Source: Obrimoposthia wandeli (Eukaryota). From it: a stretch of DNA of 64,000 nucleotides. The position numbers were made by a program, and so were the translations under genes. Where the stretch lies: positions 1,984,001 through 2,048,000 of the forward strand of contig CDROCS010000370.1 in the NCBI GenBank assembly GCA_977020255.1. Direction: 5' to 3'. Of this stretch, positions 43,424 to 64,000 are shown one piece after another. The notes beneath the pieces are model-generated. The model was not told where the DNA came from. It did not search any database and was given only the letters and a program-made list of their open reading frames with translations. Position 1 is the stretch's first letter; the number at the start of each line of letters is the position of its first letter.

Positions 43424-43439
43424 GTGGATGTACTGTAGT

Positions 43440-44620: not shown

Positions 44621-44629
44621 TGGCCAAAG

Positions 44630-46430: not shown

Positions 46431-46492
46431 AAAGCAATGCTTTAGCCTCTTGTACATATATGCCTTCTTATAGAAACCCCAACATATTAAAG

Positions 46493-46502
46493 TGGTGGCC
46501 CG
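46493..46502 (+). promoter_or_regulatory. Primer-binding site, tRNA-Ile(AAU)-like
   Basis: TGGTGGCCCG is complementary to the 3' end of eukaryotic tRNA-Ile(AAU); lies 8 nt after an LTR-type end CCCCAACA (46484). Confidence 0.7.
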
Positions 46503-46539
46503 AGTGAGGATAGCTCGTCGGACACAGCGAATTCACGTA

Positions 46540-46850
46540 GAATAAGTTTCAGATAATTGAGAATAAGTTTCAGGTAAATAGAATAAGTTTCAGATAATTG
46601 AGAATAAGTTTCAGGTAAATAGAATAAGTTCAGATAATTGAGAATAAGTTTCAGGTAAATAGAACAAGTTCAGATATTGAGAATAAGTTTCAGGTAAATA
46701 GAATAAGTTCAGATATTGAGAATAAGTTTCAGATAAATTGAGAATAAGTTTCAGCAGAAGAATATAGACAATTGAGAATAAGTTTCAGAAGAAGATATAA
46801 GCAAATTTAGAATAAGTTTCAGAAGAAGATATAAGTAAATTGAGATAAGT
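46540..46850. repeat. ~20-21-bp tandem array in the retroelement leader
   Basis: Alternating gaataagtttcagataattga / gaataagtttcaggtaaata units. Confidence 0.9.
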
Positions 46851-47290
46851 TTTTGAGAAATCGAGTAGATTTGTTCCTCGAAGTTAAGAATTTGATAAGT
46901 TTTGAGAAATCGAGTAGATTTGTTCCTCGAAGTTAAGAATTTGATAAGTTTTGAGAAATCGAGTAGATTTGTTCCTCGAAGTTAAGAATTTGATAAGTTT
47001 TTGAGAAATCGAGTAGATTTGTTCCTCGAAGTTAAGAATTTGATAAGTTTTGAGAAATCGAGTAGATTTGTTCCTCGAAGTTAAGAATTTGATAGGTTTT
47101 GAGAAATCGAGTAGATTTGTTCCTCGAAGTTAAGAATTTGATAAGTTTTGAGAAATCGGGTAGATTTGTTCCTCGAAGTTGAAAATTTGATAAGTTTTTG
47201 AGAAATCGGGTAGATTTGTTCCTCGAAGTTAAGAATTCGATAAGTTTTGAGAAGTCGAGTGGATTTGTTCCTCGAGTTCAGTAAATTTGA
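46845..47290. repeat. 49/50-bp tandem array, 9 copies, in the leader
   Basis: Unit gataagttttgagaaatcgagtagatttgttcctcgaagttaagaattt. Confidence 0.93.
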
Positions 47291-47503
47291 TAAAGTGAGA
47301 ATCGAGTGGATTGATACTCGAAGTAATTAATTGAATAGGTTAAGTCGGGAGACTGTGTCCTCGAACTAATTAAAGAGATAAAAAATCGTAAATAAATTTG
47401 ATAAAGTGAGAATCGAGTGGATTGATACTCGAAGTAATTAATTGAATAGGTTAAGTCGGGAGACGTGTCCTCGAACTAATTAAAGAGATAAAAAATCGTA
47501 AAA
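47284..47503. repeat. ~110-bp tandem duplication directly upstream of gag
   Basis: aaatttgataaagtgagaatcgagtgg...aaaatcgtaaataa occurs twice. Confidence 0.9.
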
Positions 47504-47537
47504 TAAGAATTGTGAAATAAGATAAAATAATAAGTAA

Positions 47538-48485
47538 ATTGATATCGTAAACGAATACATAATTGATAAGACAACGGATAATAGAAAAGGACCCGCGTAT
47601 AATACTAGAAGACAAAGTCAGATTCCCAAGGAAGAGATAAATAATAATAAAGTTAACCGAATTGAACAGGTTCCCCAAACAGATAACAAAGTAACAGAAG
47701 AGACTAGAATCGAAGAAAACGTATCAGAAAGAGACGTTGATCAATCAGCGGTTTCAACCGACAGTTTTAATTTGACTGAATTATTTGGTGACATAAACCC
47801 AGAAGAAATTGAAATTACCAATCCAGTAGCGGTTGAGGAAGTTCAAGTGAATAATATTGAAGAAATAGTTGAAGATATAGCTGAAAATATGGCTCACCCA
47901 GGAGCTCAAGTAGATAATAATGCAGGAAATAATGTAGGTGACATGAATGCCGAGCAGTTGGCACAAGCCTTAAATGCGACGTTGAGACCCAACTTTTCAG
48001 GATCATTGCAGATTACAAAGTTTAAAGGAGATGAGGAAAGTATTTGTGACTTCCTCGCAGAATATTCGAGTTGTGCAGATGTTCAAGGATGGAACGATAA
48101 AGAAAAATGTGTCCGAGTACAGGCACACTTAACCGGATTAGCACTTGAAGTGTATAAACATTTGACAGAAGCAGAACGTTTAGACTGGCCAACGTTGGAA
48201 AATGCTTTTATTGGAAAATTGGTATTAGGAGACTTAGCCAAAGTAAATAAGCGACTCATGAGAGAACGGAAACAGAAACATGACGAAGGCGTGAATGAAT
48301 ACGCGTATGTTTTGAGAACCTTGGCCGCAAGAGCGTACCCAAGAAGAATAATGAGAACTCCAGAAGGTATTCCTGTAGCTCAAGAAGCACAAGTAGTGGA
48401 AAATGACCGGAACCAAAATGAAATGGCAGAGGTTTTGTTAGATATATTTAGAGGAGGATTGAAAAAAATATTAAAGTGTTATTAG
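47538..48485 (+). CDS. Gag N-terminal/capsid segment (open from 47538; no ATG before 47889, ACG at 47574)
   Basis: YNTRRQ, ITKFKGDEE, FLAEYSSCADVQGWND, LTGLALEVY, RKQKHDEGVNEYAYVLR; shifts -1 into the next ORF at an A7 run (48462-48468). Confidence 0.88.
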   Translation: MDIVNEYIIDKTTDNRKGPAYNTRRQSQIPKEEINNNKVNRIEQVPQTDNKVTEETRIEENVSERDVDQSAVSTDSFNLTELFGDINPEEIEITNPVAVEEVQVNNIEEIVEDIAENMAHPGAQVDNNAGNNVGDMNAEQLAQALNATLRPNFSGSLQITKFKGDEESICDFLAEYSSCADVQGWNDKEKCVRVQAHLTGLALEVYKHLTEAERLDWPTLENAFIGKLVLGDLAKVNKRLMRERKQKHDEGVNEYAYVLRTLAARAYPRRIMRTPEGIPVAQEAQVVENDRNQNEMAEVLLDIFRGGLKKILKCY

Positions 48486-51400
48486 CAGTATCGGATACAA
48501 ATGATTTTGATAACGCCGTGCGAAAGGCGAGAGAGATTGAGAAAAATATAAAAAATAACGCAGCATTGGCAATTTACGCAATGACTGCAGGTGACGACGA
48601 TAAGACAAAGGTCTTCGTGAATAAAACAGAACCGAGTAATTTTCAGAATCGAAATTATGGACAAAATAAGTTTGAAAAAGTAGATGAATCCAGTAACGGA
48701 AATAGAGATAATTTCCGAAGTAGGAATCGAGATGATTCCATAGGTAGAAATAATAGTGAGTCTTGGAACAGGAATCGAGATGATTCAAGAGGTAGAAATG
48801 GTAATGATTCGTGGAATAGAAATAGAGATGATTCCAGGAATAGATTTAATATAGATAATTCAGGAAATCGCCAACCTTGGAGAGGAGACGATAGGAATTA
48901 CAACGCAAATAGAGGAGAGCGAAGTGACTCTCGATTTGGAAATAATACAGGAAGTAGTGACGGAAGATTCAATAATCGAGGAAGCGGTTTTGAATCGAAT
49001 TTCCGAAGAAATGATTTTAGAGGACGATATGATAATAGACAGAATAGTCGTCGAGTACAGTTCGAAGATGAACAAAATAAGATAGATATTCGAGGGAGAA
49101 TAATGTGTTACACGTGTAAACAAATGGGTCACTATTCGAGAGATTGTACGAGAAGTAAAGAGTTCGGAACTAACAGATTTGGAAATAATAATTTCGGTAA
49201 TAATAATTTTGGAAACAATTATAGAGGATATAATTCACCTCCGCCATGGAATAGAGGTGGTGGATATACTCCACAGTCATGGAGACCGAATAATCAGTAT
49301 ACAGATAGACAACAGTCACCAGGTAGATACAATAATTATGCAGACAGACAGCAAGGAGCTGAGAGATACAATAATTACGTAGGACAGCAAGGAGCTGAGA
49401 GATATAATAATTATGGTAGATATAATAATAATAATGTTGACAAGACAAATAGTCGCGAGAGTTCGCCGAAACCGAAAGGAAATTTTAGTTATGTAAACGA
49501 TGACAGTGATAGGAATCGCGAAACCGAGCTTCGACGCGAAATAGATTTTGAGGATAGTGATAGTAAATTTGAACGAATGTTGGGAATAATTAAAGATTCA
49601 CCACATACAAAGATGGCGAATTCATCTACGTTGTCGAAACAAGAAAAAAGTCTACACTCGAGAGAAGAGATGAATGATTTAATGAATAAAATACTAGAAG
49701 CGTATGAGACACCAATAGAGAAAACGTGTAACGCACAACCTATGACTGAGCATGTAGAAGCAGCGAGAAATGCTACGAGTATGGAAAATGTAAAAAAGAT
49801 AATTAGTGAAGCTAAAGAAACGTTGAATCAACCGTTAGATGAAACGAGTGAAGCTCCAGAAGTTTTGGCCAAATTGCAAACAATTAAAGTACACCGATTG
49901 GAAGAAGTGCGTGCAGAATTGGTTAAACATAGTCATGATAACTTGGGTTACAAAGAAGTACCACGAGGATTATTGAAAGGTTATGGTCGTTACGTACAGA
50001 GATCAAACCAAAAAGGAACGATGAAAATTTCGCTTCGATTAATTTCCGGACAGATTATACATGAAAAACTTAACGTGTATCAGACAATGAAAACTATTCG
50101 GAAAAAGTTGGCCGAGAAACTTGAAATTGATGGAATGAATATGTTGTTCCATTATAAAGGGAGATCACTAGATGATGAGGACGTACCAGTCGAGTGTGGA
50201 TATCCGATAGGAAACGAATTAGAGGAAAAAATTGATGTCATCACTGTAGGACGTCAAGAGTTAGTAGATAATGAAGGATTAACGGAGATATTAAACTCTG
50301 CGTTAGAAATGATAAAAACGCCTATAGAAATTTTAGATAGTTCAAGCGAAAGCGGAGATAATGATGTAGCTGAAGCTTGGAACAAGACATCCACACCAGA
50401 ACCGTACGTAGCTGAATTACAAGAGATGAATTTAGAAAATGAGTTGACAACTCCAGTGGTCGAAGTACCACCAGAACCAGATATAATTCAAATCAGACAA
50501 GATGAAGTCACGGATACAGCTAATCAAGCGAGACAAAACGAAAACGTAACCCAACTAGTAGGAGAAGACGAAATCTCCGAAATTGTAGATTTAGATTCAC
50601 CAATTTGGCATGCTGCATACAAAGATAGACAAGCAGTGCAGATGATGCGACAAAATGAAGAGATTGGCCATGAAGAAGGACCAAGTCAAGAGATACAGTA
50701 TAATGGTGAACCATATGATCCAGGAGAAAATCAAACTGAGTATCAGTATTTTCGAAGAGGACCTGGAAGACCTAGAAAGGACGGAAGTATATTACGAAAT
50801 GTTCTAACTGCACCACAAACTGATGAAGAGAGACATCTAAGCATTGGACAGTTAGCAGCGTCATTAGAGCAGTATAGTACGGAGCGGAATGAAGATATCA
50901 GAGGTGATATGAATTCGGAAACTCCAAGTAGTAAAGATATACTTACGGGAATTCTCAGGCAAGTGAAGCCGAAGTTGTTCAAAATGTACAGAGATGAAAC
51001 AACCGATATAACAGACAATTTGACTAAAGCAGTTAGATCACAGATGTCTGCAGTAAAGAGAATGACTGCGAATCATGTATACCATGCATCGATAGATAGA
51101 TTTTACGACGGTGAAGTTTTAGCGAGATTATGTGGAAGCCAGACTACAAATAAAAAGTTAATTACAGCGATCACATATCTATGTTTCCAATTGACGGAAC
51201 GAACGAGCCAACCTCACGAAGTCAAACAAGGAATAAATGAAGCGATGTATTTGATCGAGAATGTATTGCAGAGACGAATCGACGAAAACGGAGGTTGGGC
51301 AAAATTAAGTGACTACGCTAAAACCATTGTGGAAATGAACGAAGACGACGACGAACAATGTCATGAGAATCGTCAAAGAGAAAATAAACAATACCGTCCG

Positions 51401-52612
51401 AAAGAGAGAAACAATCAACCAAATATGTCCACAACAATGATGATGATGATGTTAGTAATGTTCATGGGAATGCAACAGGCATCAGGATTGATAGCATACG
51501 ACTGTAGCATACCAAAGATGGGACAAAAGTATTCACTGCTTGACAGCGAAGACTGTCCAGAATCACAGCCGTCAAAATTAGAGGTTAAAGGTGTTGAAAA
51601 CTACTTTGTGTATCAGGATGTTGATAAAGTACAAGTAGAAGTGAAAGAATGTTCAGTCCATTCAAGTTATCACGAATTCTATTGTGGCCATATAAGTTTT
51701 ATGTCGGAAATCACACCTACTACACCGTACAAAGCACATAAGGTTTTTCCGAGAGATTGCGAAGACGCATTTCGTACAGGAACAATAGAAATAGACAAGA
51801 ATTACAAACCTAATGTAAAAATTGGAGTGAGACGATACGAAACAGTCACGAGAGTCGGACAACGATGGGCTGATGGATCTTGTGACGGAGGAACAAAACA
51901 CGTGCGTGGAACCAAAGTAACCGAGTTAGTAATGGACGTAACGTACAAAATTGAATTAAAATCATGGACCGCCAATTTTGATAAAAAGACACAACGAATG
52001 ATGAAGTATCCAGAATGTAAAATGACGGATGCATCTTGTTTTACAGGAGAATCCACAATTGTGTATCACGTGAATCCGAAACAATGCTCTTTAGTATTTT
52101 TGAAAGAGATTAGCTTTAACAAAATAAAAGGATTCCTGTATAATAAAGATGGAGAAGGGTTCCTGTATAATAAAGTTGGAAAAGGATTGCTCAATGAAAC
52201 AAGACCAATCCCAATGACAAAGACACCTACACTGTTAATGGCAACATCAATAGAAGAAGGATTGATATTTATTAAAAAGAGAAACAAAGCGCGATGCGGA
52301 ATGACTGTTAGTACTACAAACTATCCTGGAATAGTTTTGTCCAAAGAAGCAATAGCATTGGCAGAAACCGAGCTAAAACCTAGAGATATGCAGCTACACA
52401 CGTATTTTAATAATAAAATTGATTTCTATTATCATAAAGGATTGATGCAAATGGAACAGTTATATCGGATGATGATCGAAAGAGATTGCCAGCTAAACAA
52501 AGAGATCGTAAGAACAAAGCTAGCATTAGCTATTACGAATCCAGACATGGTAGCACCATTATTACCCTTGGACGAAGGAGTGTTTGCTAAAACCATGGGA
52601 GAAGTATTGTAA
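48476..52612 (+). CDS. Gag C-terminus with CCHC knuckle, ubiquitin-like domain, AT-hook, Bcl-2-like domain and N-terminal part of the envelope glycoprotein
   Basis: CYTCKQMGHYSRDC (49106-49147); MKISLRLISG...YKGRSLDD (50021-50257); RRGPGRPRK (50753-50779); RIDENGGW (51287-51298); signal peptide plus LIAYDC (51425-51505). Confidence 0.88.
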   Translation: MLLAVSDTNDFDNAVRKAREIEKNIKNNAALAIYAMTAGDDDKTKVFVNKTEPSNFQNRNYGQNKFEKVDESSNGNRDNFRSRNRDDSIGRNNSESWNRNRDDSRGRNGNDSWNRNRDDSRNRFNIDNSGNRQPWRGDDRNYNANRGERSDSRFGNNTGSSDGRFNNRGSGFESNFRRNDFRGRYDNRQNSRRVQFEDEQNKIDIRGRIMCYTCKQMGHYSRDCTRSKEFGTNRFGNNNFGNNNFGNNYRGYNSPPPWNRGGGYTPQSWRPNNQYTDRQQSPGRYNNYADRQQGAERYNNYVGQQGAERYNNYGRYNNNNVDKTNSRESSPKPKGNFSYVNDDSDRNRETELRREIDFEDSDSKFERMLGIIKDSPHTKMANSSTLSKQEKSLHSREEMNDLMNKILEAYETPIEKTCNAQPMTEHVEAARNATSMENVKKIISEAKETLNQPLDETSEAPEVLAKLQTIKVHRLEEVRAELVKHSHDNLGYKEVPRGLLKGYGRYVQRSNQKGTMKISLRLISGQIIHEKLNVYQTMKTIRKKLAEKLEIDGMNMLFHYKGRSLDDEDVPVECGYPIGNELEEKIDVITVGRQELVDNEGLTEILNSALEMIKTPIEILDSSSESGDNDVAEAWNKTSTPEPYVAELQEMNLENELTTPVVEVPPEPDIIQIRQDEVTDTANQARQNENVTQLVGEDEISEIVDLDSPIWHAAYKDRQAVQMMRQNEEIGHEEGPSQEIQYNGEPYDPGENQTEYQYFRRGPGRPRKDGSILRNVLTAPQTDEERHLSIGQLAASLEQYSTERNEDIRGDMNSETPSSKDILTGILRQVKPKLFKMYRDETTDITDNLTKAVRSQMSAVKRMTANHVYHASIDRFYDGEVLARLCGSQTTNKKLITAITYLCFQLTERTSQPHEVKQGINEAMYLIENVLQRRIDENGGWAKLSDYAKTIVEMNEDDDEQCHENRQRENKQYRPKERNNQPNMSTTMMMMMLVMFMGMQQASGLIAYDCSIPKMGQKYSLLDSEDCPESQPSKLEVKGVENYFVYQDVDKVQVEVKECSVHSSYHEFYCGHISFMSEITPTTPYKAHKVFPRDCEDAFRTGTIEIDKNYKPNVKIGVRRYETVTRVGQRWADGSCDGGTKHVRGTKVTELVMDVTYKIELKSWTANFDKKTQRMMKYPECKMTDASCFTGESTIVYHVNPKQCSLVFLKEISFNKIKGFLYNKDGEGFLYNKVGKGLLNETRPIPMTKTPTLLMATSIEEGLIFIKKRNKARCGMTVSTTNYPGIVLSKEAIALAETELKPRDMQLHTYFNNKIDFYYHKGLMQMEQLYRMMIERDCQLNKEIVRTKLALAITNPDMVAPLLPLDEGVFAKTMGEVL

Positions 52613-52642
52613 ACTTACAAGTGTAATAAAGTAGAAGTACAG

Positions 52643-55600: not shown

Positions 55601-58600
55601 AGATTGAAGGATAGCACATCAAACAGACAAATAAACCAAATTGATGTAATTATAGAGAATCCTATAAAAATCGGTAAAAGATCACAATTTCTCATTCAAG
55701 GTCACACATTATCAGAAGATAAAGGACCAGTTGTGTTCGAACCATCACGAGATTTCATAGAGAAATACGAATTGCCAGTTGTGAGTACAGTATGTCTGAT
55801 CGAAAACCACAAAATACCAGTTAGACTGATGAATACAACCAACAATGACATTCTATTATACAGAGGAATGAGGTTGGGAAAGATAGCACAGATGGAGAAT
55901 CCCACCGTGTGTGCTATGAAACTCGATAAAGATACGAATGATTACGAAGAAATAGTAATCCAATCAGAAAGACTGACAACTAGAGAAAAGAAACAATTAC
56001 TTGATCTAATACATAAATTTCCGAAAGTAATTGCAAAAAATCCATATGACATAGGAGAAACACCTGTCATAAAACATACAATACCACTGACAGAAGATAA
56101 AGTAGTCAGAAGAAGACCATATCGAGTACCATTACAGTTACAAGATGAAGTAAAAAGTCAGATCGAAGATATGTCTAAAACAGGAGTAATTAGACCGAGT
56201 TTTTCGCCATTCTCAGCACCTGTGGTGTTGGTAAAAAAGAAGGATGGGAAAATGAGATTCTGTATAGATTTCAGAGAACTGAACAAGATCACAAGAAAAG
56301 ATGTGTATCCATTACCTAGAATCGAAGAAATGCTCGATAAATTGGGTAATTCAGATTATTTTACAACATTAGATTTGCAGAGTGGATACTGGCAAATCGA
56401 GATAGAGGAAGAGGATAAACACAAAACAGCCTTTTCCTGCGGAGATGGATTATACGAATGCGAAAAGATGCCATTCGGACTGACAGGAGCTCCAGCAACA
56501 TTTCAGCGTTGCATGAATTTTGTACTCGCATCGTGTGCAAACACGATGGTTTATATCGATGACATAATAATATTTTCGAAAACGTTCGAAGAACATTTAA
56601 AAAATCTTGAAGTTGTATTTAAAAGACTGGAAAACGCTAAATTAAAAGTTAAACCTACAAAATGCGAATGGGCTAAAGAGCGAGTAACATTTTTAGGACA
56701 TATAGTATCGAAAGAAGGCATTCGACCTGATCCGGCAAAGATCGAGAAAGTAAAAGCGCATTTAGCGCCAAAGACTGTTAAGGAGATACAGAGTTTTTTA
56801 GGTCTTGCGAATTATTATAGACGATTTGTTGAACATTTTTCAGATATAGCAACACCATTGAGAAAGTTGACGAGGAAAGATGAGAAGTTCATATGGGGAG
56901 AAGAAGCACAACAAGCGTTCGAGCATTTAAAAGAAAGACTAATCAAAGCACCAATATTAGCGTTTCCAGATATAAACCGACAATTCATACTCATGACAGA
57001 TGCAAGTAACTATGCTGTAGGAGCAGTATTGGGACAAGAGGATGACGAAGGAAGAGAACACGTCATCGCGTATGCGAGTAGAGGATTAAACAGAGCCGAA
57101 AGAGGATACTCTGTTATCGAAAAGGAATGTCTAGCCATAGTGTATTCCTGTAGACAATACAGACACTACTTGCTAGGACAAAAAGTATTCCTGTATACAG
57201 ATCACAAACCACTACAGTTCTTATATAAACATAGAGATGAGATGAGTAGATTAAACAGATGGTTTCTAAAATTGGCCGAATTCGATCTAGAAATCCGTTA
57301 TAGAACCGGAAAGTCGAATGGCAACGCAGATTGTTTGTCGAGATTGACAAATGTAGACGAGAAAGGAAACATAATTCCAGAAGAAGATGAAACCAATGAC
57401 CAAAAAGGAGAAGCAAATCTACTGACGATTTTGCTGAAGACGGGTAAAATAGACAAAGAGATCATCAAGGAACAGAAAGAAGATGAAGAATTGAGTCTAA
57501 TCAAAGAATTGTTGGTGAAAGGAGATCTAAACGATGAAATGACGAAAAAATACTCGATAAAAGAAGGAATCTTGTATATTGTCAATAATGTCGGAAAGAT
57601 AATAGTAGTAATTCCGAAGTCATTGAAAACAGCAGTAATGATCCAGTACCACGATGGAACCTTAGGAGGACATCTGTCAGGGCGAAAGACAATAGCCAGA
57701 ATCAAAGAGAAATACCATTGGGATGGTATGGAAGACGACATAAAACAATGGTGTAAACAATGTAAAGTATGTTTAACCAGAAAAGACACTGGAACTCGTA
57801 CTAAAGTTCCACTGAAACCAATGCCAGTCCCCTTGGCACCAATGGAATTCACAGCGATGGATATATTGGGACCATTGAGAGAATCAAGTAAAGGAAACAA
57901 GTACGTCATAGTATTTACAGACTATATGACGAGATGGGTAGAAGCATATCCCATGCAGAACCAGAAAGCTGAAACAATAGCGCAAATCTTAGTGGAAGAG
58001 ATAATATTTCGATACGGAGTGCCTAGAAAGTTGTTAACGGATCAAGGTAAGAACTTCACTGGAGAAGTAATAAAAGCAGTATCGAAGATATTCGGAATTA
58101 TGAAGTTACAAACTTCACCATATCACCCACAAACATATGGTCTAGTAGAAAGGTTTAATAAAACTTTATGTATGATGGTACAATCCTATTGCTCAGACAA
58201 GCAAGAGGATTGGGATAAATATTTACCTTCATGTTTATATGCTTACAGGAATTCAGTTCGAGAGGCGACGGGTCACACACCATTCTATCTGATGTATCTC
58301 AGACAGAACAATATGCCAATGGATCTGGAGTGGACCGAGCCAACATCTCAGTATCTAGAAACTGAACAATACATTGTCGTCATGAAGGAAAGATTGCAAG
58401 ATGCTTGGACCAAAGCCGGAGTGAAGTTGAAATTCAATCAAGAAGGTTACAAGAAACAATACGACAAAAAAGCAAAACCACATGAATTTAGAGTCGGAGA
58501 TCAAGTGATGATATTTTATCCAGTCATCGAACCAGGTCTATCGTTTAAACTCCATAGACCATACAAAGGACCGTACAAGGTGATCCAGACAACCTCAACA

Positions 58601-61168
58601 AATTTGAAAGTAATCAACGAGGAGAATCGGAACAAGGAACCGATGATTGTACATGCAAATCGATGTAAATTGGTACCAAATAAAGATAACGCGTCACGAT
58701 ATGAGTTAAGATCACAGAAATTGAAGCCGAATACCAATACCATTAAACTTACACGAATGGTAAGTGATCGGAACTACATAAAAATGATGACGAATGGTAG
58801 CGAGAAAAAACCAGCGAGAATTGGTATGCTCAGAATGAAGCACCAAGAGGAAAAGGAAGTAATCCGACACATCGCACCACAAGAGATATTAGAAGAAGAT
58901 GAAGAGATAATAGTTGTTTTCGAAAAAACACAATCAACAGATGTGGCTAAAGAAGTCATTGTGAAAGATGCACTGACAAACGAATTTCTGTGCGAACTTA
59001 GAGTGTCATACTATGACGGAAATACACTAGTCGCAGCACTTTATCAAAACTCCAATGTGTTTACGACTGAGAAAGTGATAATCGAAATCACATTGACACC
59101 AAACATAGTTGCATGGCAGAACTATGACAGTACTGAAGCAGGACTAGCCAGTCAGGAAGAAAAGGAACCGGCCGGTGGTCACATACTGTATGGTACACCA
59201 AAAAGACTCAAACAAGAATACCACGATGTAATAATGGTATTACGTAATTCACATGGGAAAAGAGATATTATGAGAGTTCATTTAATCGACGCAGACACCG
59301 AAAAGATAATTTGTCAGATGGACGCCAAATACTTTGATGGAAAGACAATTGTATGTTGTATACCAGAATCTCACCGGTTAGACACAGATCAAACGGAAGT
59401 ATCTGTAAGGTTGAGCGTAATAGAAGGATTTCATTCGCCAAACCAACCGGAAGTGACCAACAATAAAATCATCAAAGCAACGGCAGAGTTACGCATTGAC
59501 AGCGGATACCGGAAGTGGGAAGCTAAAAATAAAAAACCACAAAGAATCAATATGATCCGAGAACAAGTAACCAACTCAATCCAGCCAAAATATCATGCTG
59601 AAATAGTATCATCCGCGCCAAGTGTGATTACATCGATAAACGACGAAATTTTAATTTTACTAAAAAGTCGATGGCCGTCATCAACCGAGATACGAGTCAA
59701 TTTAATTAATTATGCGAAAACACCGATATCTAAGCTGAATGTTACCTATTTCGATGGATTATCCATCATGGGTAAATTAGAAACAATTGTCATGTACTAT
59801 GGAGCGCAGTTCCAAGTTGAGATACTTAAAGATAGCGTAATACCGTATCCGATTCACAAATACGAAGGGGAAATCAATCCAATTATTCTAACCCCTTCAT
59901 TAATTTCAGTTCAGACAGACATACCAGAATACCCTTCGAGCGAGTCTAGTCAAGACAGCGAACCGGAAAGTAACGATACAGAATCAACAGAATCCGAAGA
60001 TAACATGATAGAGCGATTCGGAAAAACCATGGAGGTTGAATTCGCTAAAGAGAGCAGAAAAAGACAAAACATAGAATTCGTGAAACAGAATATACAAGAA
60101 AGACGAATTAAATCTGCAGAAGAGACCGAGTCGGAAGAAGACTCAACAAAGGAACAGACATCAGAGACAAAGATGAATATCTCTCCAGCAATACGAATGC
60201 TGAGAGGAAAGAAACTGGCGAAACTATCCAACATCGACGAACAGATAGAGAAGAGATTAGAAAGACTAAAACTCGAAGAGTCAGAATTATTGCCACCAAT
60301 GAGTGAGATCATTCCAGATAAGTTATACCTCGGAAATGTGGAAGATGCAACAGATGAAAAGAAACTGTTGGAACAAGGGATAACATACGTGATCAACGTT
60401 ACAATGAATCACAAATCACAATATCAGACAATCAGAGCTATGACATTACGAGTAAAAGACTCAATGGACGCTAATCTTCTCGAATGGTTCGTAGAAACAA
60501 ACGAAATACTTCACAGAGAACTCCGAAACCAAGGAAAAGTGTTGGTACATTGTCAAAAAGGAATCTCTCGATCAGCAACCCTAGTATTAGCATATCTAAT
60601 AAAGACTAGACGAATGCAGGTACTAGAAGCACTGAAATACCTACAGGAGAGAAGAAGTATTGCAAACCCAAATCTTAATTTTTTGGGACAGTTGTCAAAT
60701 TACCAACTTCTGTTGCAAGAACAAAGACGGATGGATGACATCCCTGAGGATCCAAAGGAAAAGAATTTCCTCCAAGCATTATCATTGACCGGGTTATTCT
60801 TAGCCGGAGTCGACAAAATTACACAAATAATGCCAAAAGTATTTTTATGTTATCCAGGATATATAGATACTGCTGGATTAAAGTTCCACAGTATCAACCG
60901 AGTAATCAACATTGTTGAAGTCGGAAACGAGATAATTAGTCTGTGTCAAAATACTGAAGACGACACCACTCGATACATACATGCTTCCAATCGAGAGATA
61001 AACGATGCACAACAACATCTGACGAAATTGACTCAAACCATCCAAGCCGAAGTCACAGAAGGAAACGGCGTGCTGATATATCAGAAAAAAGGTACGATGT
61101 TAGCGCCTACCATAGGTGTATCCTTGTCACACACCAGAAGAAGCGATGGTCTACATCAAACAGAATAG
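52643..61168 (+). CDS. Envelope C-terminus/TM, protease, BIR, BIR-like, RING, protease, RT, RNase H, integrase, three TIG-like repeats, DUSP and pseudo-DUSP
   Basis: DTG at 53693 and 55337; CVWC...H...CPF; CAVC...CGH...CPIC; YIDD 56552; TDAS 56996; HHCC and D-D-E; HCQKGISRS 60548; in frame with the previous ORF across a single TAA (52610-52612). Confidence 0.93.
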   Translation: MRTTNRCTSELAVTHNLKELFVEPITRMILPKDTPTKEISCSNIMAPEYQMTNDLCITLPDRKPTKTPAMIKMTNLKGKMKFEAVENMENAGLYNEKDLKAAWNEIMFPVKRARVLTEMVHRALPPGARYANFDMLLSPSHFKEAAHQTLRKMWGKFLVLGQLFSGIIGIYVIIKFVQVIIAQVLSTYSLYRITGITWQLIIGCFPFLAKYLMHHHHENELRALKKEQHQTRTMMREPRNYQDDNDDDNDSPGVYAKIPGKPKIPLPDKEEVALNLYPMKELKEEKEKFKRGILMIRWPKMSYSEIPQAEEKDKKDNSRIILKSRISNENPNAPPQVAVTLNGREYLAEVDTGSAVSVLSKEILSSKELREVCPRKQTFVNVNGTDVVSEGTLKCSLNIDGRALQLNARIFTDCGSPVMIGMDVIRMFEGIIILPNNKSYKNDSSVREIKMLRRPIVEKEKYTTFRMGNSYQDKKQEALVKSILHYKNVNLGPQEMTRRKITYVNLSEKDPMRFEKKRRNILEQYYSKEMARKMARSGLEMLNATSSYGHEEVVRCVWCRVKFREWEKNENPMRRHKKDAPNCPFLLKLKTSNVPEIQKGKAPDFDYSDEIPKGKSALITGRVITNSRIEDIFEVMREVNECDEQYREVTFEDPRLKKLAKKGLFAIKKDGKDVIKCHKCKKERIIDRYTLELPKKILHHEFCEFCMLKNKIKQKEQKTECIIEYQITRKEILAQQDTPVVSFVRRLYPKEAERIRDLVELKIKTTRNGYGSIFELLKDKDDSTIETKEKEYINELEYVLEDPECAVCMVNKIEVAFLPCGHVRTCRRCANEMVSCPICRRIIDRQERNIRFHYPNLGSGPTECNNSINTIYHMENINGAQRPAAIIRVNNLRVKALIDTGAVASIVSEDCFTEEQKRTMAEPDEFLVSVNGDPVKVTGILPCTFIIGRNTITIPVRIMKECPEPTILGMDVLSQLKGISIDLQDPRLKDSTSNRQINQIDVIIENPIKIGKRSQFLIQGHTLSEDKGPVVFEPSRDFIEKYELPVVSTVCLIENHKIPVRLMNTTNNDILLYRGMRLGKIAQMENPTVCAMKLDKDTNDYEEIVIQSERLTTREKKQLLDLIHKFPKVIAKNPYDIGETPVIKHTIPLTEDKVVRRRPYRVPLQLQDEVKSQIEDMSKTGVIRPSFSPFSAPVVLVKKKDGKMRFCIDFRELNKITRKDVYPLPRIEEMLDKLGNSDYFTTLDLQSGYWQIEIEEEDKHKTAFSCGDGLYECEKMPFGLTGAPATFQRCMNFVLASCANTMVYIDDIIIFSKTFEEHLKNLEVVFKRLENAKLKVKPTKCEWAKERVTFLGHIVSKEGIRPDPAKIEKVKAHLAPKTVKEIQSFLGLANYYRRFVEHFSDIATPLRKLTRKDEKFIWGEEAQQAFEHLKERLIKAPILAFPDINRQFILMTDASNYAVGAVLGQEDDEGREHVIAYASRGLNRAERGYSVIEKECLAIVYSCRQYRHYLLGQKVFLYTDHKPLQFLYKHRDEMSRLNRWFLKLAEFDLEIRYRTGKSNGNADCLSRLTNVDEKGNIIPEEDETNDQKGEANLLTILLKTGKIDKEIIKEQKEDEELSLIKELLVKGDLNDEMTKKYSIKEGILYIVNNVGKIIVVIPKSLKTAVMIQYHDGTLGGHLSGRKTIARIKEKYHWDGMEDDIKQWCKQCKVCLTRKDTGTRTKVPLKPMPVPLAPMEFTAMDILGPLRESSKGNKYVIVFTDYMTRWVEAYPMQNQKAETIAQILVEEIIFRYGVPRKLLTDQGKNFTGEVIKAVSKIFGIMKLQTSPYHPQTYGLVERFNKTLCMMVQSYCSDKQEDWDKYLPSCLYAYRNSVREATGHTPFYLMYLRQNNMPMDLEWTEPTSQYLETEQYIVVMKERLQDAWTKAGVKLKFNQEGYKKQYDKKAKPHEFRVGDQVMIFYPVIEPGLSFKLHRPYKGPYKVIQTTSTNLKVINEENRNKEPMIVHANRCKLVPNKDNASRYELRSQKLKPNTNTIKLTRMVSDRNYIKMMTNGSEKKPARIGMLRMKHQEEKEVIRHIAPQEILEEDEEIIVVFEKTQSTDVAKEVIVKDALTNEFLCELRVSYYDGNTLVAALYQNSNVFTTEKVIIEITLTPNIVAWQNYDSTEAGLASQEEKEPAGGHILYGTPKRLKQEYHDVIMVLRNSHGKRDIMRVHLIDADTEKIICQMDAKYFDGKTIVCCIPESHRLDTDQTEVSVRLSVIEGFHSPNQPEVTNNKIIKATAELRIDSGYRKWEAKNKKPQRINMIREQVTNSIQPKYHAEIVSSAPSVITSINDEILILLKSRWPSSTEIRVNLINYAKTPISKLNVTYFDGLSIMGKLETIVMYYGAQFQVEILKDSVIPYPIHKYEGEINPIILTPSLISVQTDIPEYPSSESSQDSEPESNDTESTESEDNMIERFGKTMEVEFAKESRKRQNIEFVKQNIQERRIKSAEETESEEDSTKEQTSETKMNISPAIRMLRGKKLAKLSNIDEQIEKRLERLKLEESELLPPMSEIIPDKLYLGNVEDATDEKKLLEQGITYVINVTMNHKSQYQTIRAMTLRVKDSMDANLLEWFVETNEILHRELRNQGKVLVHCQKGISRSATLVLAYLIKTRRMQVLEALKYLQERRSIANPNLNFLGQLSNYQLLLQEQRRMDDIPEDPKEKNFLQALSLTGLFLAGVDKITQIMPKVFLCYPGYIDTAGLKFHSINRVINIVEVGNEIISLCQNTEDDTTRYIHASNREINDAQQHLTKLTQTIQAEVTEGNGVLIYQKKGTMLAPTIGVSLSHTRRSDGLHQTE

Positions 61169-62627
61169 ACCAGATACGGAATTCAAACCGTTACTCGTTC
61201 GAGAAATAGAGAAGTACGCCGAAAAGAGGAAGCAACAACGAGAAACAAATGAAGCTACAACAACAGTGCCCAGCTTTCAATACCAAAGATTGCTAGCGAT
61301 AGGCTTGTTAAGTTGTCTAATGCCGATAACGGGAGCACAAGAGATAGACTCCAACCACGGAAATAGTTCCTGGTTCAAAGAAATCCACAACTACATCATA
61401 CAGTACCATACACCGGCACTGATGATGCTATTAGTGTTGTTAGGATTAATTGATGTGTGGATCATCCGAAAATGTCTCCGATCTATGAGAACCGACAGTA
61501 AACGATTTCAGTTTGTAAAGATGAAAAGACCAAATGGACCGACGAACAAAGTACTTGTGTATCTAGACGAAAGGATCGAGAACAACATAGTAAATGAAGC
61601 GATATTTTACCCACAAAACAGAATACTGAATCAATTCCGAATGGATTACGAAGCTGACCGACAGCGCACACTTGACCGAATATCAACAACATTCGCCGGA
61701 TGCAAGCGGAGAAAACGAATTGTAAAGGAAATACAAAAAGATGCTGATACAAAAGGACCGACGTATATATTCGACGGCGATGTCATCAAAACACGTGAGT
61801 ATGGAAGTAAGAGAGTGATAATTGAAACGATGGAAGGACATAAAACATGCTTGTCCGCCAAAAATGGATTCGGAAAGTTGATGATACAAGGTAAACAGGT
61901 ACAGTTGATTATCGGAAAAACTGGAATCGAAGAAATGTCAAAACAACGACAGACAACAAAACGATCCAACCAGAAACAGATATCACTCAAACGAATGATA
62001 ATTAAAACCCTTTGCAAAAGGTCAGTCAAGGCCCTGTGCACCGTTGCACAAGGATTGATCTACGGAGTAGTAATTGGATTGGTACTACAAGCCATGCCGA
62101 CCAGTAAAGCTGAACTGATGACATTATCTGAATATAATCTACATTTGAGAAATCTGGACAACACCCTAGAAATAATCAAGACGTCCCACAGTAAAGCCGT
62201 GATGATCATGTGTGTAAAAGGATGTCCAGGACGAATGTGTATAGTTCCAGCGACCGAAATGAAAACACTTAATGGACATTATGGAATTAGTGTTGTCACA
62301 TGTGAAGACTACACATTTGGACAAACTAAAATAGTACTTCTCAGTGACATGTCCAACCAAAGTGCACATAAATTTAAAATATTAACCATCAAGAGTAAAG
62401 GGATACCAGCAATACGTTATGGTATTCTAGAATTGGTTAATCCAATACTGGCACTGATCATTGGATTTATAATATTAATATTACTCATCTTGTTTTGTTG
62501 TACAAAGATAGAGTTGAGATCAAAAAAGAAACGTCATGATCTCGCAAGACGAACAGGTCAAATGAATTTACAAAAATTCAACACAAGTATACCAAGACCA
62601 CCCTTCCTAGATGAACCAGCACCATAG
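61116..62627 (+). CDS. Pseudo-DUSP C-terminus followed by two signal-peptide/TM cassettes
   Basis: EEAMVYIKQNRP completes the second DUSP fold across a +1 shift; hydrophobic segments at ~61287, 61416, 62052 and 62445. Confidence 0.75.
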   Translation: MYPCHTPEEAMVYIKQNRPDTEFKPLLVREIEKYAEKRKQQRETNEATTTVPSFQYQRLLAIGLLSCLMPITGAQEIDSNHGNSSWFKEIHNYIIQYHTPALMMLLVLLGLIDVWIIRKCLRSMRTDSKRFQFVKMKRPNGPTNKVLVYLDERIENNIVNEAIFYPQNRILNQFRMDYEADRQRTLDRISTTFAGCKRRKRIVKEIQKDADTKGPTYIFDGDVIKTREYGSKRVIIETMEGHKTCLSAKNGFGKLMIQGKQVQLIIGKTGIEEMSKQRQTTKRSNQKQISLKRMIIKTLCKRSVKALCTVAQGLIYGVVIGLVLQAMPTSKAELMTLSEYNLHLRNLDNTLEIIKTSHSKAVMIMCVKGCPGRMCIVPATEMKTLNGHYGISVVTCEDYTFGQTKIVLLSDMSNQSAHKFKILTIKSKGIPAIRYGILELVNPILALIIGFIILILLILFCCTKIELRSKKKRHDLARRTGQMNLQKFNTSIPRPPFLDEPAP

Positions 62628-63953
62628 TACCAGCCAACGATATATGAACATATCGAGGAAAGACCGTACTATATGAGTAATTTGAGCTGTTTCATTGAAA
62701 TTCCTGAGTTTAGGAATCGAACGATCATAGGAATCATGCTGATCATACAAATTACCACTACCAAGGCTAGTTATGAGATCATGATCAGTAAATGGAGACA
62801 AGACGTAATACGGGCGTTATACATAGAAATCCCTCTATTAAAAACAAATCACGTAGTAGACATTCATCTACAGACGTCAGCAACCGACAATATCGATCAG
62901 AAATTGTATGTCATCCGACAGGTCAGAATCAAGATCGACCAAAGTACACCCGACTACAAACTAATATTATTCCATCATGAAAGAGTGTTATACCTACGGA
63001 TAACGATATCAAAGAGGAAGCGGATTATCCAAAGTATCCGAACAAAGTCATTAATATTGCCTAGAGATGAGCGCATCTGGAAAATTGTCGACAGGATTAT
63101 GATCACAGGTAGACGACGTAAAGCCGTATGGAATTCCGTTAGAATATTTTTCAGATTGCTAGAAACTGACAAAGTAACAGTATCGTGTCCCAATCCAGAT
63201 GGCGGAATCAGATTCGAAATCCAAAACCAAATGTTAGTACCACATTTTGATACAGAATGTCTATGTAACCGAATTCCCAGCAATGCTACAGAGACCTCGA
63301 CCATAATCATGGTAATAACAGGTGAAATATTCTACATAACTCTAAGATACCAGAACCGTCGATTTCGTAGATCCGGTATAAGTATCAAACCCAGGAAAAT
63401 CATTCCCAAAAAACCAATCCTAGTCAAAAAGAAGGCAAAGGTAAACGAAAGTAAACACCATTCCAAAAAGCCGAAAGTGATCAGAACAAAGACAGAAGCG
63501 AAAGAAAAAGAGCTCAATTCCAGAAACCAAAGTACAGTGATTAAGAGGACAAGAGTGAGGGGAACGATCCCACTAGATCCCAAACATAATTTCCAATCCA
63601 AAATAATAATACCTGTTCCATCAGAAACAAAACACCCAAATCCACGAATTTTTAGAAAATCGGACATAATACATGGAAACCGATCAAAACCCATGGAAAT
63701 GTCATTCGAACCGACAAACAACAAAATGAAGTATGATTATCAATCATCAGATAGCAGAGTAACAGCGGTCAATGCTCTAATTGGAATGGCCGTAGTGTCA
63801 ACAGCAGTGGTTCTATTGACAGTTGTGTGCGTAAAAGGCAGTCAAGTATGCCCAAGAATACGACGAAAATGCGAAGGACTGCGATGCTGTGACACACCCA
63901 CCATGGAGGAAGTGGAACTGCGACCCTTACCTCCGCCTCCCATCAAGATATGA
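62628..63953 (+). CDS. Terminal polyprotein segment: signal-peptide/ectodomain/TM cassette with Pro-rich tail (first ATG 62673)
   Basis: In frame with the previous ORF across a single TAG (62625-62627); hydrophobic segments at ~62718 and 63776; ends PLPPPPIKI*. Confidence 0.7.
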   Translation, partial: YQPTIYEHIEERPYYMSNLSCFIEIPEFRNRTIIGIMLIIQITTTKASYEIMISKWRQDVIRALYIEIPLLKTNHVVDIHLQTSATDNIDQKLYVIRQVRIKIDQSTPDYKLILFHHERVLYLRITISKRKRIIQSIRTKSLILPRDERIWKIVDRIMITGRRRKAVWNSVRIFFRLLETDKVTVSCPNPDGGIRFEIQNQMLVPHFDTECLCNRIPSNATETSTIIMVITGEIFYITLRYQNRRFRRSGISIKPRKIIPKKPILVKKKAKVNESKHHSKKPKVIRTKTEAKEKELNSRNQSTVIKRTRVRGTIPLDPKHNFQSKIIIPVPSETKHPNPRIFRKSDIIHGNRSKPMEMSFEPTNNKMKYDYQSSDSRVTAVNALIGMAVVSTAVVLLTVVCVKGSQVCPRIRRKCEGLRCCDTPTMEEVELRPLPPPPIKI

Positions 63954-64000
63954 TAAGTCAGAGGAGGTTGTAGATAAATTAGTGTGTGAAATATGTAGAA

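What the first reader, a model, noticed from the sequence alone, without database searches (positions are those of the whole stretch)
46435..64000. Giant enveloped Gypsy element encoding one ~5,460-codon polyprotein with a host-manipulation toolkit
Seen: from 47574 to 63953 (16,380 nt) the frame is broken only four times, and each break falls inside a continuous domain or is a single in-frame stop. Order: Gag, UBL, AT-hook, Bcl-2-like, envelope, PR, BIR, BIR-like, RING, PR, RT, RH, IN, 3xTIG-like, DUSP, pseudo-DUSP, three membrane cassettes. Established: typical Gypsy elements are 5-10 kb, and carrying IAP, Bcl-2 and phosphatase genes is a large-DNA-virus strategy. From memory, giant Gypsy elements with accessory domains (Burro) were reported in the planarian Schmidtea; overlap with those must be checked before claiming novelty. 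Inference: a retrovirus-like agent that blocks both arms of apoptosis and modulates signalling in cells it infects.
Basis: partly seen in the sequence, partly recalled or inferred. Interest (0 to 1): 0.93.

Follow-up and report, generated by a model that had tools for sequence, protein, structure and literature searches.

The report
Giant Burro-type enveloped retroelement copy
The region is a real, slightly damaged copy of a giant retrovirus-like element of the already described planarian "Burro" type, whose single huge protein carries an envelope gene, cell-death inhibitors and, apparently not reported before, a MAP-kinase-phosphatase-like domain.

Summary
On the + strand, 47,574-63,953 consists of five open stretches (5,496 codons counted stop to stop), separated by two frame changes and two single in-frame stops. 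Pfam and PDB searches confirm Gag/CCHC, a Mononegavirales-type fusion glycoprotein in frame between gag and pol, two aspartic proteases, BIR + BIR-like + IAP-type RING, RT-RNaseH-IN, and an MKP-type dual-specificity phosphatase with an intact catalytic motif. The ubiquitin-like domain and the pseudo-phosphatase are supported by profile tests. The Bcl-2-like call is only weakly supported. "TIG-like" is not supported, although three all-beta repeats are real. The three membrane cassettes rest on hydropathy alone.

The architecture (one giant ORF; Gag-UBL-Bcl2-Env-PR-BIR-RING-RT-RH-IN) matches what Arkhipova & Yushenova 2019 (PMC6431247) describe for Burro/GYPSM1 elements of dugesiid planarians, including the idea that they interfere with apoptosis. 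It is therefore a new member of a known kind, not a new kind. The phosphatase/pseudo-phosphatase pair, the beta repeats and the C-terminal membrane proteins are not mentioned in the literature I could read. No Burro sequence could be fetched for direct comparison. The 3' LTR lies outside the window.

The parts
43314..46492 (+). Candidate 5' LTR / upstream region of the element (bounds unverified)
   Evidence: GC rises to 0.36-0.42 against about 0.30 in the flanking genome. It contains a 46-nt x 13.5 tandem array at 45,443-46,069. No second LTR in the window allows the ends to be fixed.
46493..46517 (+). PBS-like motif (TGG...)
   Evidence: Read directly. No tRNA gene in the window to match it. 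Tentative.
46538..47502 (+). Leader made of several tandem-repeat arrays (20/39, 34, 49 and 111 nt units)
   Evidence: Tandem repeats are also drawn in the Burro figure legend of PMC6431247.
47889..50008 (+). gag: capsid-like domain, one CCHC zinc knuckle (49,106-49,150), and an R/N/G-rich low-complexity tail. Broken by one frameshift.
   Evidence: Retrotrans_gag E 0.0077 (below Pfam cut-off) and zf-CCHC E 7e-6. 33% identity over 107 aa to the Gag part of the relative P0001, E 6e-18. First in-frame ATG read.
50009..50260 (+). Ubiquitin-like domain (no C-terminal Gly-Gly)
   Evidence: Pfam ubiquitin E 0.02. PDB ubiquitin variants E 0.006. Conserved in relative L001, E 9e-6. A two-sequence profile hits ubiquitin/NEDD8/ISG15/SUMO, with single-domain hits at 6e-5 to 1e-2.
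50753..50785 (+). AT-hook-like motif (G-R-P core in a basic context)
   Evidence: Read from the translation. Too short for any statistical test.
50828..51400 (+). All-helical region, possibly Bcl-2-like
   Evidence: Pfam Bcl-2 E 0.11 over profile positions 36-100 (the BH1-BH2 part), far below cut-off. An NGGW motif lies at the BH2 position. Single-sequence AlphaFold gives seven helices but pLDDT 39. No PDB sequence hit. The position matches the BCL2-like motif of Burro.
51425..53380 (+). env: signal-like hydrophobic segment, fusion-glycoprotein ectodomain, membrane anchor (53,111-53,197) and tail. Broken by one in-frame stop.
   Evidence: PF24664 Monjiviricetes_fusion: N part E 1.5e-40, C part E 3.6e-40. 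43% identity to env of P0001. TM segment.
53651..53914 (+). Aspartic protease 1 (D-T-G present)
   Evidence: Asp_protease_2 E 4e-11. Motif read.
54194..55171 (+). IAP-like module: BIR (54,194-54,403), BIR-like (54,599-54,760), C3HC4 RING (55,055-55,171)
   Evidence: BIR E 1.6e-14 with two stretches. zf-C3HC4_3 E 3e-11. PDB: cIAP1/XIAP RING at 3e-14 to 1e-9, NAIP/DIAP1/cIAP BIR at 2e-11 to 1e-4. Zinc ligands read; the second BIR has non-canonical spacing.
55283..55576 (+). Aspartic protease 2 (D-T-G-A present)
   Evidence: gag-asp_proteas E 4e-15, RVP E 1e-7. Aligned with the PR of P0001.
56231..58882 (+). pol core: RT (56,231-56,707), RNase H (56,894-57,283), integrase (57,611-58,882)
   Evidence: RVT_1 2e-38, RT_RNaseH 1e-38, Integrase_H2C2 7e-18, rve 7e-12. 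48% identity over 1,263 aa to P0001. YIDD read.
58877..59890 (+). Three repeats of an all-beta domain of about 70-90 aa, family unknown
   Evidence: The repeats align at 19-24% identity with 8 invariant columns. AlphaFold on that alignment gives five strands, pLDDT 59. Foldseek best E 0.03, generic beta domains. No Pfam hit. PDB profile hits only at E 0.07 or worse.
60293..60739 (+). Dual-specificity phosphatase, MKP type, catalytic motif H-C-x-x-G-x-x-R intact
   Evidence: DSPc E 8e-35. PDB DUSP10/4/1/2/16 at 2e-23 to 2e-20. Nearest named relatives are animal DUSP10-like proteins at 42-46% identity. Motif read.
60815..61260 (+). Pseudo-phosphatase (second DUSP-fold domain with catalytic Cys and Arg replaced). 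Broken by one frameshift.
   Evidence: I built a DUSP profile from 166 domain instances. The piece before the shift scores 19.8 bits (profile positions 39-134). The piece after it scores 8.4 bits (profile positions 146-187). No shuffle out of 2,000 reached either score. Pairwise BLAST is only E 0.29 and 0.35. No Pfam or PDB hit.
61290..63953 (+). C-terminal membrane-protein region: three cassettes of signal-like segment + ectodomain + membrane anchor + basic tail (61,290-61,475; 62,031-62,507; 62,724-63,839). One in-frame stop in a spacer, possibly a natural ORF boundary. The reading frame ends at 63,953.
   Evidence: Hydropathy scans and translations. No Pfam or PHROGs family. No similarity between the cassettes or to P0001. 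P0001 also has TM segments after its integrase.

Best explanation
This is a young but damaged genomic copy of a Burro-type giant Ty3/Gypsy (Metaviridae-like) endogenous retrovirus-like element. It sits in an AT-rich, intron-bearing animal genome of planarian-like composition.

Shown: one reading frame of about 16.4 kb encodes, in order:
1. Gag/NC
2. a ubiquitin-like domain
3. an AT-hook-like motif
4. a helical, possibly Bcl-2-like region
5. a Mononegavirales-type fusion glycoprotein with its own signal-like segment and membrane anchor
6. protease 1
7. an IAP-like BIR/BIR-like/RING module
8. protease 2
9. RT-RNaseH-integrase
10. three beta repeats
11. an MKP-type phosphatase with an intact active-site motif
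12. a dead phosphatase copy
13. three type-I-like membrane cassettes

Inferred mechanism: the full-length RNA is translated into one polyprotein that is threaded through the ER membrane by its internal signal and anchor segments. This would place the Env and cassette ectodomains in the lumen and Gag, the proteases, the IAP module, pol and the phosphatases in the cytosol, as in flavivirus polyproteins. The polyprotein would be cut by the two element proteases and by host signal peptidase. Gag/NC and pol would form the replication particle, and Env would allow cell-to-cell spread. The accessory modules would keep the expressing cell alive and quiet: the IAP (and perhaps Bcl-2-like) domains against caspase-dependent death, and the phosphatase against stress-MAPK signalling. 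The pseudo-phosphatase may act as a substrate trap or regulator.

This copy carries breaks in gag, env, the pseudo-phosphatase and the C-terminal region, so it is not itself coding-competent as assembled.
For: - Frame continuity and break count.
- Domains.
- Ty3/Gypsy order PR-RT-RH-IN and Gag with a CCHC knuckle.
- Uniform composition of every module (GC 0.36-0.40, AT skew +0.20 to +0.46, GC3 0.27-0.40, codon-usage correlation 0.61-0.95), against host values of GC 0.31, AT skew about 0 and host kinase ORF GC3 0.54. The cargo is therefore old and integral.
- A relative (the P0001 cluster) has 20 members, each with an uninterrupted 4,026-4,029 aa gag-UBL-env-PR-PR-RT-RH-IN-PR ORF, 48% identical in pol. 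This shows that a single giant gag-env-pol ORF is the maintained state of this clade.
- The published Burro description has the same backbone and the same UBL/BCL2/env/BIR/RING placement: PMC6431247.
- Hydrophobic segments are in the places that the topology model needs.
Against: - No Burro sequence could be fetched, so membership rests on architecture, composition and the literature, not on alignment.
- MATH/MDN1, dUTPase-like, ankyrin and Smc motifs reported for Burro-1 were not found here.
- Only one CCHC knuckle was found, against two or three reported.
- The LTRs are unverified, because the 3' LTR lies outside the window and the 5' bounds are not fixed.
- Bcl-2 is not significant.
- The phosphatase lacks the N-terminal rhodanese/kinase-interaction domain of true MKPs, so its substrate cannot be inferred.
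- Polyprotein topology, processing and every host-manipulation role are inference.
- No close copies or cargo-bearing relatives were found in any searchable collection.
Confidence: 0.8

Rival explanations
1. It is a separate, undescribed family of giant gag-env-pol elements that only resembles Burro by sharing an ancestral backbone. It would have its own cargo set (DUSP, pseudo-DUSP, beta repeats, membrane cassettes), possibly in a host other than a dugesiid planarian.
For: Cargo not mentioned for Burro. Burro-1 motifs (MATH, ankyrin, Smc, dUTPase-like) are absent. The only retrievable relative (P0001) shares the backbone and UBL but none of the IAP/DUSP cargo, so cargo turns over fast in this clade.
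Against: The published description already stresses that accessory modules differ between Burro members and species. The placement of UBL, BCL2-like, env, BIR and RING is the same. Host composition (about 30% GC) fits planarian genomes, which are more than 70% A/T (PMC11410931).
Confidence: 0.15
2. The cargo is not part of the element. Host IAP, DUSP and membrane-protein genes, or another element, were brought next to a Gypsy backbone by nested insertion or by assembly error.
For: Giant repeat-rich elements are hard to assemble. No second copy could be examined.
Against: - All modules lie in one frame with only four breaks over 16.4 kb, and none of the breaks coincides with a backbone/cargo junction.
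- Composition and codon usage are uniform and unlike the host ORF.
- No repeats or duplications flank any module.
- The DUSP is only 42-47% identical to any cellular DUSP in 1.8 billion representatives, so it is not a recent host capture.
- The IAP/UBL/env modules sit where Burro has them.
Confidence: 0.04
3. The copy is in fact intact. The frame changes and stops would be assembly or sequencing errors, or programmed recoding, and the last stop would be a true ORF boundary before a separate accessory ORF.
For: One frame change lies in a stretch containing a 7-nt homopolymer. The last in-frame stop is in a spacer and is soon followed by an ATG that opens a 426-codon ORF. The relative L001 also has separate downstream ORFs. 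All catalytic motifs that I read are intact.
Against: The other frame change has no homopolymer. One stop lies inside the env ectodomain and one shift inside the capsid-like domain, where recoding has no precedent, and the relative P0001 is continuous there.
Confidence: 0.15

Closest known systems
Burro-1 to -4 / GYPSM1 of Schmidtea mediterranea and the Burro-like element of Dugesia (Girardia) tigrina (Jurka 2007; Grohme et al. 2018; Arkhipova & Yushenova 2019, PMC6431247)
   Same: Giant Gypsy-type element with one ORF of about 5,000 codons. Gag + CCHC, ubiquitin/SUMO-like domain, BCL2-like motif and a mononegavirus-like env in frame between gag and pol. PR, BIR, RING-type motif, RT-RH-IN. Tandem repeats in the non-coding part. 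AT-rich host. A proposed role in apoptosis/ubiquitin interference.
   Different: No MATH_TRAF_C/MDN1, dUTPase-like, ankyrin or Smc motif was found here, and only one CCHC knuckle. After the integrase this copy carries three beta repeats, an MKP-type DUSP, a pseudo-DUSP and three membrane cassettes, none of which is mentioned in the description I could read. No sequence comparison was possible.
P0001 cluster (ENA assemblies ERZ2271605 and ERZ2271892; Logan ERR3573160), an unnamed relative found here
   Same: Single uninterrupted gag-UBL-env-PR-PR-RT-RH-IN ORF. 48% identity in pol, 43% in env C-half, UBL conserved. TM segments after the integrase. AT-rich (32-33% GC).
   Different: 4,026-4,029 aa. 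No BIR, RING or DUSP. A third protease after the integrase. Two separate downstream ORFs with RNase_T-type exonuclease domains.
GAG-ENV-POL Ty3/Gypsy elements with gB-type (class III) env in Platyhelminthes, Nematoda and Bryozoa (PMC13524379), and the nematode elements with a captured RNA-virus glycoprotein cited there (Sacco et al. 2022)
   Same: The env of a class III / RNA-virus type lies between gag and pol in a Gypsy backbone.
   Different: As far as the paper says, those are ordinary-sized elements with separate ORFs and no IAP, UBL or phosphatase cargo.
Insect errantiviruses (gypsy, ZAM and others)
   Same: Enveloped Ty3/Gypsy elements, structurally analogous to retroviruses.
   Different: Their env is F-type (baculovirus-like), a separate third ORF after pol and expressed from a spliced RNA. 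They are 7-8 kb with no host-derived cargo (own knowledge).
Large DNA viruses carrying IAP, Bcl-2 and DUSP genes (baculovirus IAPs, herpes/pox vBcl-2, poxvirus VH1-type phosphatases)
   Same: The same set of host-derived modules, presumed to serve cell-survival and signalling control (own knowledge).
   Different: In those viruses the modules are separate genes in DNA genomes. Here they are domains of a retroelement polyprotein.

Membership tests
Ty3/Gypsy (Metaviridae-type) LTR retroelement | pol domain order PR-RT-RNaseH-IN with Gypsy-type RT_RNaseH and Integrase_H2C2 domains | tested here: met
   gag-asp_proteas, RVT_1, RT_RNaseH, Integrase_H2C2 and rve in that order.
Ty3/Gypsy (Metaviridae-type) LTR retroelement | Gag with capsid-like domain and CCHC nucleocapsid knuckle upstream of pol | tested here: met
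   zf-CCHC E 7e-6. Retrotrans_gag is weak, but the region is homologous to the Gag of P0001 (E 6e-18).
Ty3/Gypsy (Metaviridae-type) LTR retroelement | Two long terminal repeats with PBS and PPT next to them | tested here: inconclusive
   The window ends 47 nt after the ORF. That tail is not repeated upstream. A PBS-like TGG motif and a GC-richer block of about 3 kb lie upstream, but no LTR pair could be seen.
Burro (giant planarian Gypsy) | One giant ORF (more than 4,800 codons) fusing gag, env and pol | tested here: met
   about 5,400-5,500 codons in one reading frame, apart from four breaks. The env profile lies between gag and pol.
Burro (giant planarian Gypsy) | Ubiquitin/SUMO-like and BCL2-like modules between gag and env | tested here: inconclusive
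   UBL met. Bcl-2 only at Pfam E 0.11 plus an NGGW motif.
Burro (giant planarian Gypsy) | BIR and RING-type motifs between the protease and RT | tested here: met
Burro (giant planarian Gypsy) | MATH_TRAF_C or MDN1, dUTPase-like, ankyrin and Smc motifs, as in Burro-1 and the D. tigrina element | tested here: not met
   No such Pfam hits even at E up to 5. The literature says these modules vary between members.
Burro (giant planarian Gypsy) | Sequence similarity to deposited Burro/GYPSM1 entries; host in Dugesiidae | not testable with these tools
   No Repbase or planarian genome is in any searchable collection. Exact look-ups of window proteins found nothing. Host GC of about 30% is consistent with planarians.
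IAP (inhibitor of apoptosis) proteins | BIR domain with C-C-H-C zinc site plus C-terminal C3HC4 RING | tested here: met
   BIR1 is canonical, BIR2 has non-canonical spacing, and the RING is closest to cIAP1/XIAP.
MAP kinase phosphatases (MKP-type DUSPs) | DSPc fold with H-C-x5-R active site | tested here: met
MAP kinase phosphatases (MKP-type DUSPs) | N-terminal rhodanese-like domain with a kinase-interaction motif | tested here: not met
   The region upstream of the catalytic domain is an acidic low-complexity linker with no Pfam hit.
Bcl-2 family | Helical bundle with BH1/BH2 motifs that passes the family model | tested here: inconclusive
   Pfam 13.5 bits against a cut-off of 31.4. The structure model is unusable. 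No PDB sequence hit.
TIG/IPT immunoglobulin-like domains | Match to TIG models or an Ig-like fold | tested here: not met
   No Pfam hit. No PDB profile hit to TIG. Foldseek best E 0.03, to unrelated small beta domains, on a model of pLDDT 59.
Insect errantiviruses | F-type env as a separate ORF downstream of pol | tested here: not met
   The env is PF24664 (Monjiviricetes type) and lies between gag and pol in the same frame.

The most novel reading that the evidence does not exclude
A lineage of giant enveloped retroelements has made an MKP-type phosphatase, a matching pseudo-phosphatase and three type-I membrane proteins into permanent domains of its gag-env-pol polyprotein. This would be a signalling-control module not described for Burro or, to my knowledge, for any retroelement. 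The whole protein would be organised like a membrane-threaded flavivirus polyprotein.
Probability: 0.35. Interest if true: 0.6.

Novelty: new member of a known kind. Interest (0 to 1): 0.45.

Why it matters
Burro-type elements are the largest LTR retroelements known and make up a sizeable share of planarian genomes. They are active in differentiated tissues when PIWI is lost (PMC8532177).

This copy shows that the family's cargo goes beyond apoptosis and ubiquitin modules. It also includes a catalytically competent-looking MAPK-phosphatase-type domain paired with a dead copy, plus extra membrane proteins. That widens the picture of how far a retroelement can go towards the gene content of a large DNA virus. 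It also gives concrete domains to look for in planarian expression and proteome data.

It does not open a new category. The basic discovery (a giant single-ORF gag-env-pol element with anti-apoptotic cargo) was published in 2007-2019.

Tried and rejected
1. Relatives of the cargo regions. The word-indexed protein searches found nothing for UBL-Bcl2 or PR-BIR-RING. For the post-integrase region they found only P0001 and distant pol hits.
2. The exhaustive HMMER search with the post-integrase cargo returned only cellular DUSPs among the top 150 hits. Weaker hits to the beta repeats, if any, were not visible.
3. DNA/protein scans of IMG/VR and JGI metagenomes, using pol, the cargo and an env alignment, found nothing.
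4. Exact look-up of four window proteins to identify the organism found nothing in the collection.
5. Single-sequence AlphaFold of the Bcl-2-like region gave pLDDT 39 and is unusable. The three-repeat alignment gave pLDDT 59 and only generic Foldseek matches.
6. PDB sequence searches for env, the Bcl-2-like region and the pseudo-DUSP gave no meaningful hits.
7. The LTR could not be defined. There is no internal repeat pair, the window tail is not repeated upstream, and no remnant of the element lies in 1-47.5 kb.
8. Rfam and tRNA scans of the window were empty.
9. Grohme et al. 2018 and the primer/supplement tables that might have given Burro sequences are not held.
10. A weak RRM/UHM resemblance of the repeats (PUF60/FIR, E 0.3-0.4) was rejected, because the model is all-beta.
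11. A programmed gag-pol frameshift was considered for the first frame change. I rejected it because the shift lies inside the capsid-like domain and the relative is continuous there.

Full report

**Observation.**
- The + strand between 47,574 and 63,953 holds five very long open stretches, and nothing comparable lies on the other strand.
- Counted stop to stop they sum to 5,496 codons. They are separated by two frame changes and two single in-frame stops (one TAA, one TAG). The window has no N.
- The region differs in composition from the rest of the window: GC 0.36-0.40 against about 0.31, and a strong A-over-T excess of +0.20 to +0.32 against about 0.
- At this base composition, open stretches of more than 1,300 and more than 2,800 codons cannot be chance.
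- The affected genes are gag (one frameshift), env (one stop), the pseudo-phosphatase (one frameshift) and the C-terminal membrane region (one stop in a spacer).
- One frame change lies in a stretch with a 7-nt homopolymer; the other does not.

**Domains, in order.**

| Domain | Evidence | Verdict |
|---|---|---|
| Gag | Retrotrans_gag only E 0.0077, but 33% identical over 107 aa to the Gag part of relative P0001 (E 6e-18). A CCHC knuckle (E 7e-6) and an R/N/G-rich tail follow. | Supported |
| Ubiquitin-like domain | Weak alone. Conserved in the relative (E 9e-6). The two-sequence profile finds ubiquitin, NEDD8, ISG15 and SUMO. No terminal Gly-Gly. | Supported |
| AT-hook | A G-R-P core in a basic context can be read. 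| Untestable |
| Bcl-2-like region | Pfam E 0.11 over the BH1-BH2 part and an NGGW motif. The AlphaFold model is helical but has pLDDT 39. No PDB hit. | Inconclusive |
| Env | A hydrophobic signal-like segment, then PF24664 (Monjiviricetes fusion glycoprotein) in two halves (E 1.5e-40 and 3.6e-40), then a membrane anchor. | Confirmed |
| Protease 1 | D-T-G present. | Confirmed |
| IAP-like module | A canonical BIR, a BIR-like domain with unusual zinc-ligand spacing, and an IAP-type RING closest to cIAP1/XIAP. | Confirmed |
| Protease 2, RT, RNase H, integrase | RT has YIDD. 48% identical over 1,263 aa to P0001. | Confirmed |

**After the integrase.**
- Three repeats of 70-90 aa share 19-24% identity and a common pattern.
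  - AlphaFold on that alignment gives a five-stranded all-beta unit at pLDDT 59.
  - Foldseek finds only generic small beta domains (best E 0.03).
  - Pfam and PDB profiles give nothing for TIG. 'TIG-like' is therefore not supported, but the triple repeat is real.
- An acidic linker follows, then a DSPc domain (E 8e-35).
  - Its best solved relatives are DUSP10, DUSP4, DUSP1, DUSP2 and DUSP16.
  - Its H-C-x-x-G-x-x-R motif is intact.
  - Its nearest named relatives are animal DUSP10-like proteins at 42-46% identity. None is close enough to suggest a recent capture.
  - It lacks the rhodanese/kinase-interaction domain of true MKPs.
- The next segment is a degenerate second DUSP domain.
  - Against a profile that I built from 166 DUSP domain instances, the piece before the frame change scores 19.8 bits and the piece after it 8.4 bits.
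  - The two pieces are collinear in the profile, and no shuffle out of 2,000 reached either score.
  - The catalytic Cys and Arg positions are replaced.
- The last 900 or so codons hold three pairs of a signal-like segment and a strong membrane anchor, with ectodomains of increasing length and basic tails. They match no family.
- The in-frame stop in this region lies in a spacer and is soon followed by an ATG. The last cassette may therefore be a separate accessory ORF, as in the relative L001.

**Is the cargo integral?**
- Every module shares the backbone's composition and codon usage (correlation 0.61-0.95). All differ from a host kinase ORF in the same window (GC3 0.54 against 0.27-0.40).
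- No break coincides with a backbone/cargo junction, and no repeats flank any module.
- This argues against nested insertions and mis-assembly. No second copy could be examined, however.

**Surroundings.**
- Upstream lie host-type sequences: kinase exons, a calpain fragment and an L7Ae-family ORF, at about 30% GC.
- From about 43.3 kb the GC rises. A 46-nt x 13.5 array lies at 45,443-46,069, a PBS-like TGG motif at about 46,493, and a 1-kb leader made of tandem arrays follows.
- The ORF ends 47 nt before the window end, and that tail is not repeated upstream. The 3' LTR, and possibly more internal sequence, lies outside the window, and the 5' LTR bounds stay open.

**Relatives.**
- The only retrievable relative is the P0001 cluster. 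It has 20 members at 90% identity or more, each an uninterrupted 4,026-4,029 aa ORF on a 14.6-18.4 kb contig from ENA and Logan assemblies.
- Its order is Gag-UBL-Env-PR-PR-RT-RH-IN-PR, followed by a TM-bearing tail and two exonuclease ORFs. It has no BIR, RING or DUSP.
- It shows that a single giant gag-env-pol ORF is the maintained state in this clade, and that the cargo turns over.
- All other searches for relatives were empty.

**Comparison with what is known.**
- Arkhipova & Yushenova 2019 (PMC6431247) describe Burro/GYPSM1 of Schmidtea mediterranea and a Burro-like element of Dugesia tigrina.
- These have one 4,873-5,140 aa ORF with Gag and CCHC knuckles, MATH or MDN1, a Ubi2/SUMO-like domain, BCL2-like, an env with hits to mononegavirus fusion glycoproteins in frame between gag and pol, PR, BIR, a RING-type motif, a dUTPase-like motif, RT-RH-IN, ankyrin and Smc.
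- They also have tandem repeats and variable accessory ORFs. The authors suggest that the element tinkers with apoptosis and ubiquitination.
- The present element has the same backbone and the same placement of UBL, Bcl2-like, env, BIR and RING, in a genome of planarian-like composition.
- GAG-ENV-POL Gypsy elements with class III env are also reported for Platyhelminthes (PMC13524379).
- The phosphatase pair, the beta repeats and the membrane cassettes are not mentioned in any text I could search. Grohme et al. 2018 and Repbase could not be read.

**How it most likely works** (inference beyond the domain calls).
- One polyprotein is threaded through the ER membrane by its internal signal and anchor segments. 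It is cut by its two proteases and by signal peptidase.
- Gag/NC and pol build the replication complex, and Env mediates spread.
- The IAP module (and perhaps the Bcl-2-like region), the UBL and the phosphatase pair dampen death and stress signalling in the expressing cell.
- This copy is broken in gag and env and is not itself competent as assembled.

**Verdict.** This is a new member of the known Burro kind, with some apparently undescribed cargo. Interest is moderate.

Noticed in passing
L001 1-16509, L002 1-18362, L003 1-14580 (ENA ERZ2271605, ERZ2271892; Logan ERR3573160): A cluster of 20 near-identical, uninterrupted 4,026-4,029 aa gag-UBL-env-PR-PR-RT-RH-IN-PR polyproteins on 14.6-18.4 kb contigs. 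In one assembly this contig is NODE_1. Each is followed by two ORFs with RNase_T/DEDD exonuclease domains. GC is 32-33%. The source organism is unknown. It looks like a currently intact, high-copy relative of the Burro type.
   Followed up: partly
window 17410-17754 (+): A 114-aa ORF with a hit to Recombination endonuclease VII (PF02945, E 1e-5), unusual in an animal genome. It may belong to another mobile element.
   Followed up: no
window 20891-21712 (-) and 25650-26081 (+): Two ORFs with protein-kinase domain fragments on opposite strands about 4 kb apart. They could be host exons or a duplicated or inverted gene fragment.
   Followed up: no
window 6972-7310 (+) and 38772-39233 (+): A calpain (Peptidase_C2) fragment and a complete-looking 153-aa L7Ae/L30e/S12e-family ORF. 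This is the host gene context. The exact sequences are not in the protein collection.
   Followed up: partly
window 40230-40337 and 43314-43423: A 110-nt direct repeat at 91% identity, 3,084 nt apart. The second copy lies where the GC-richer block upstream of the element begins. Its meaning is unknown.
   Followed up: partly
proteins P0006-P0012 and others: Many of the best DUSP matches are cellular proteins with two or three tandem DUSP domains, for example in the rotifer Didymodactylos carnosus and the shrimp Palaemon carinicauda. A tandem phosphatase arrangement therefore exists outside the element too.
   Followed up: partly
window 53651-53914 and 55283-55576; P0001: The element has two separate retropepsin-like domains with intact D-T-G, split by the IAP module. 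The relative has three. Whether they pair within one chain, like a pepsin, is open.
   Followed up: no
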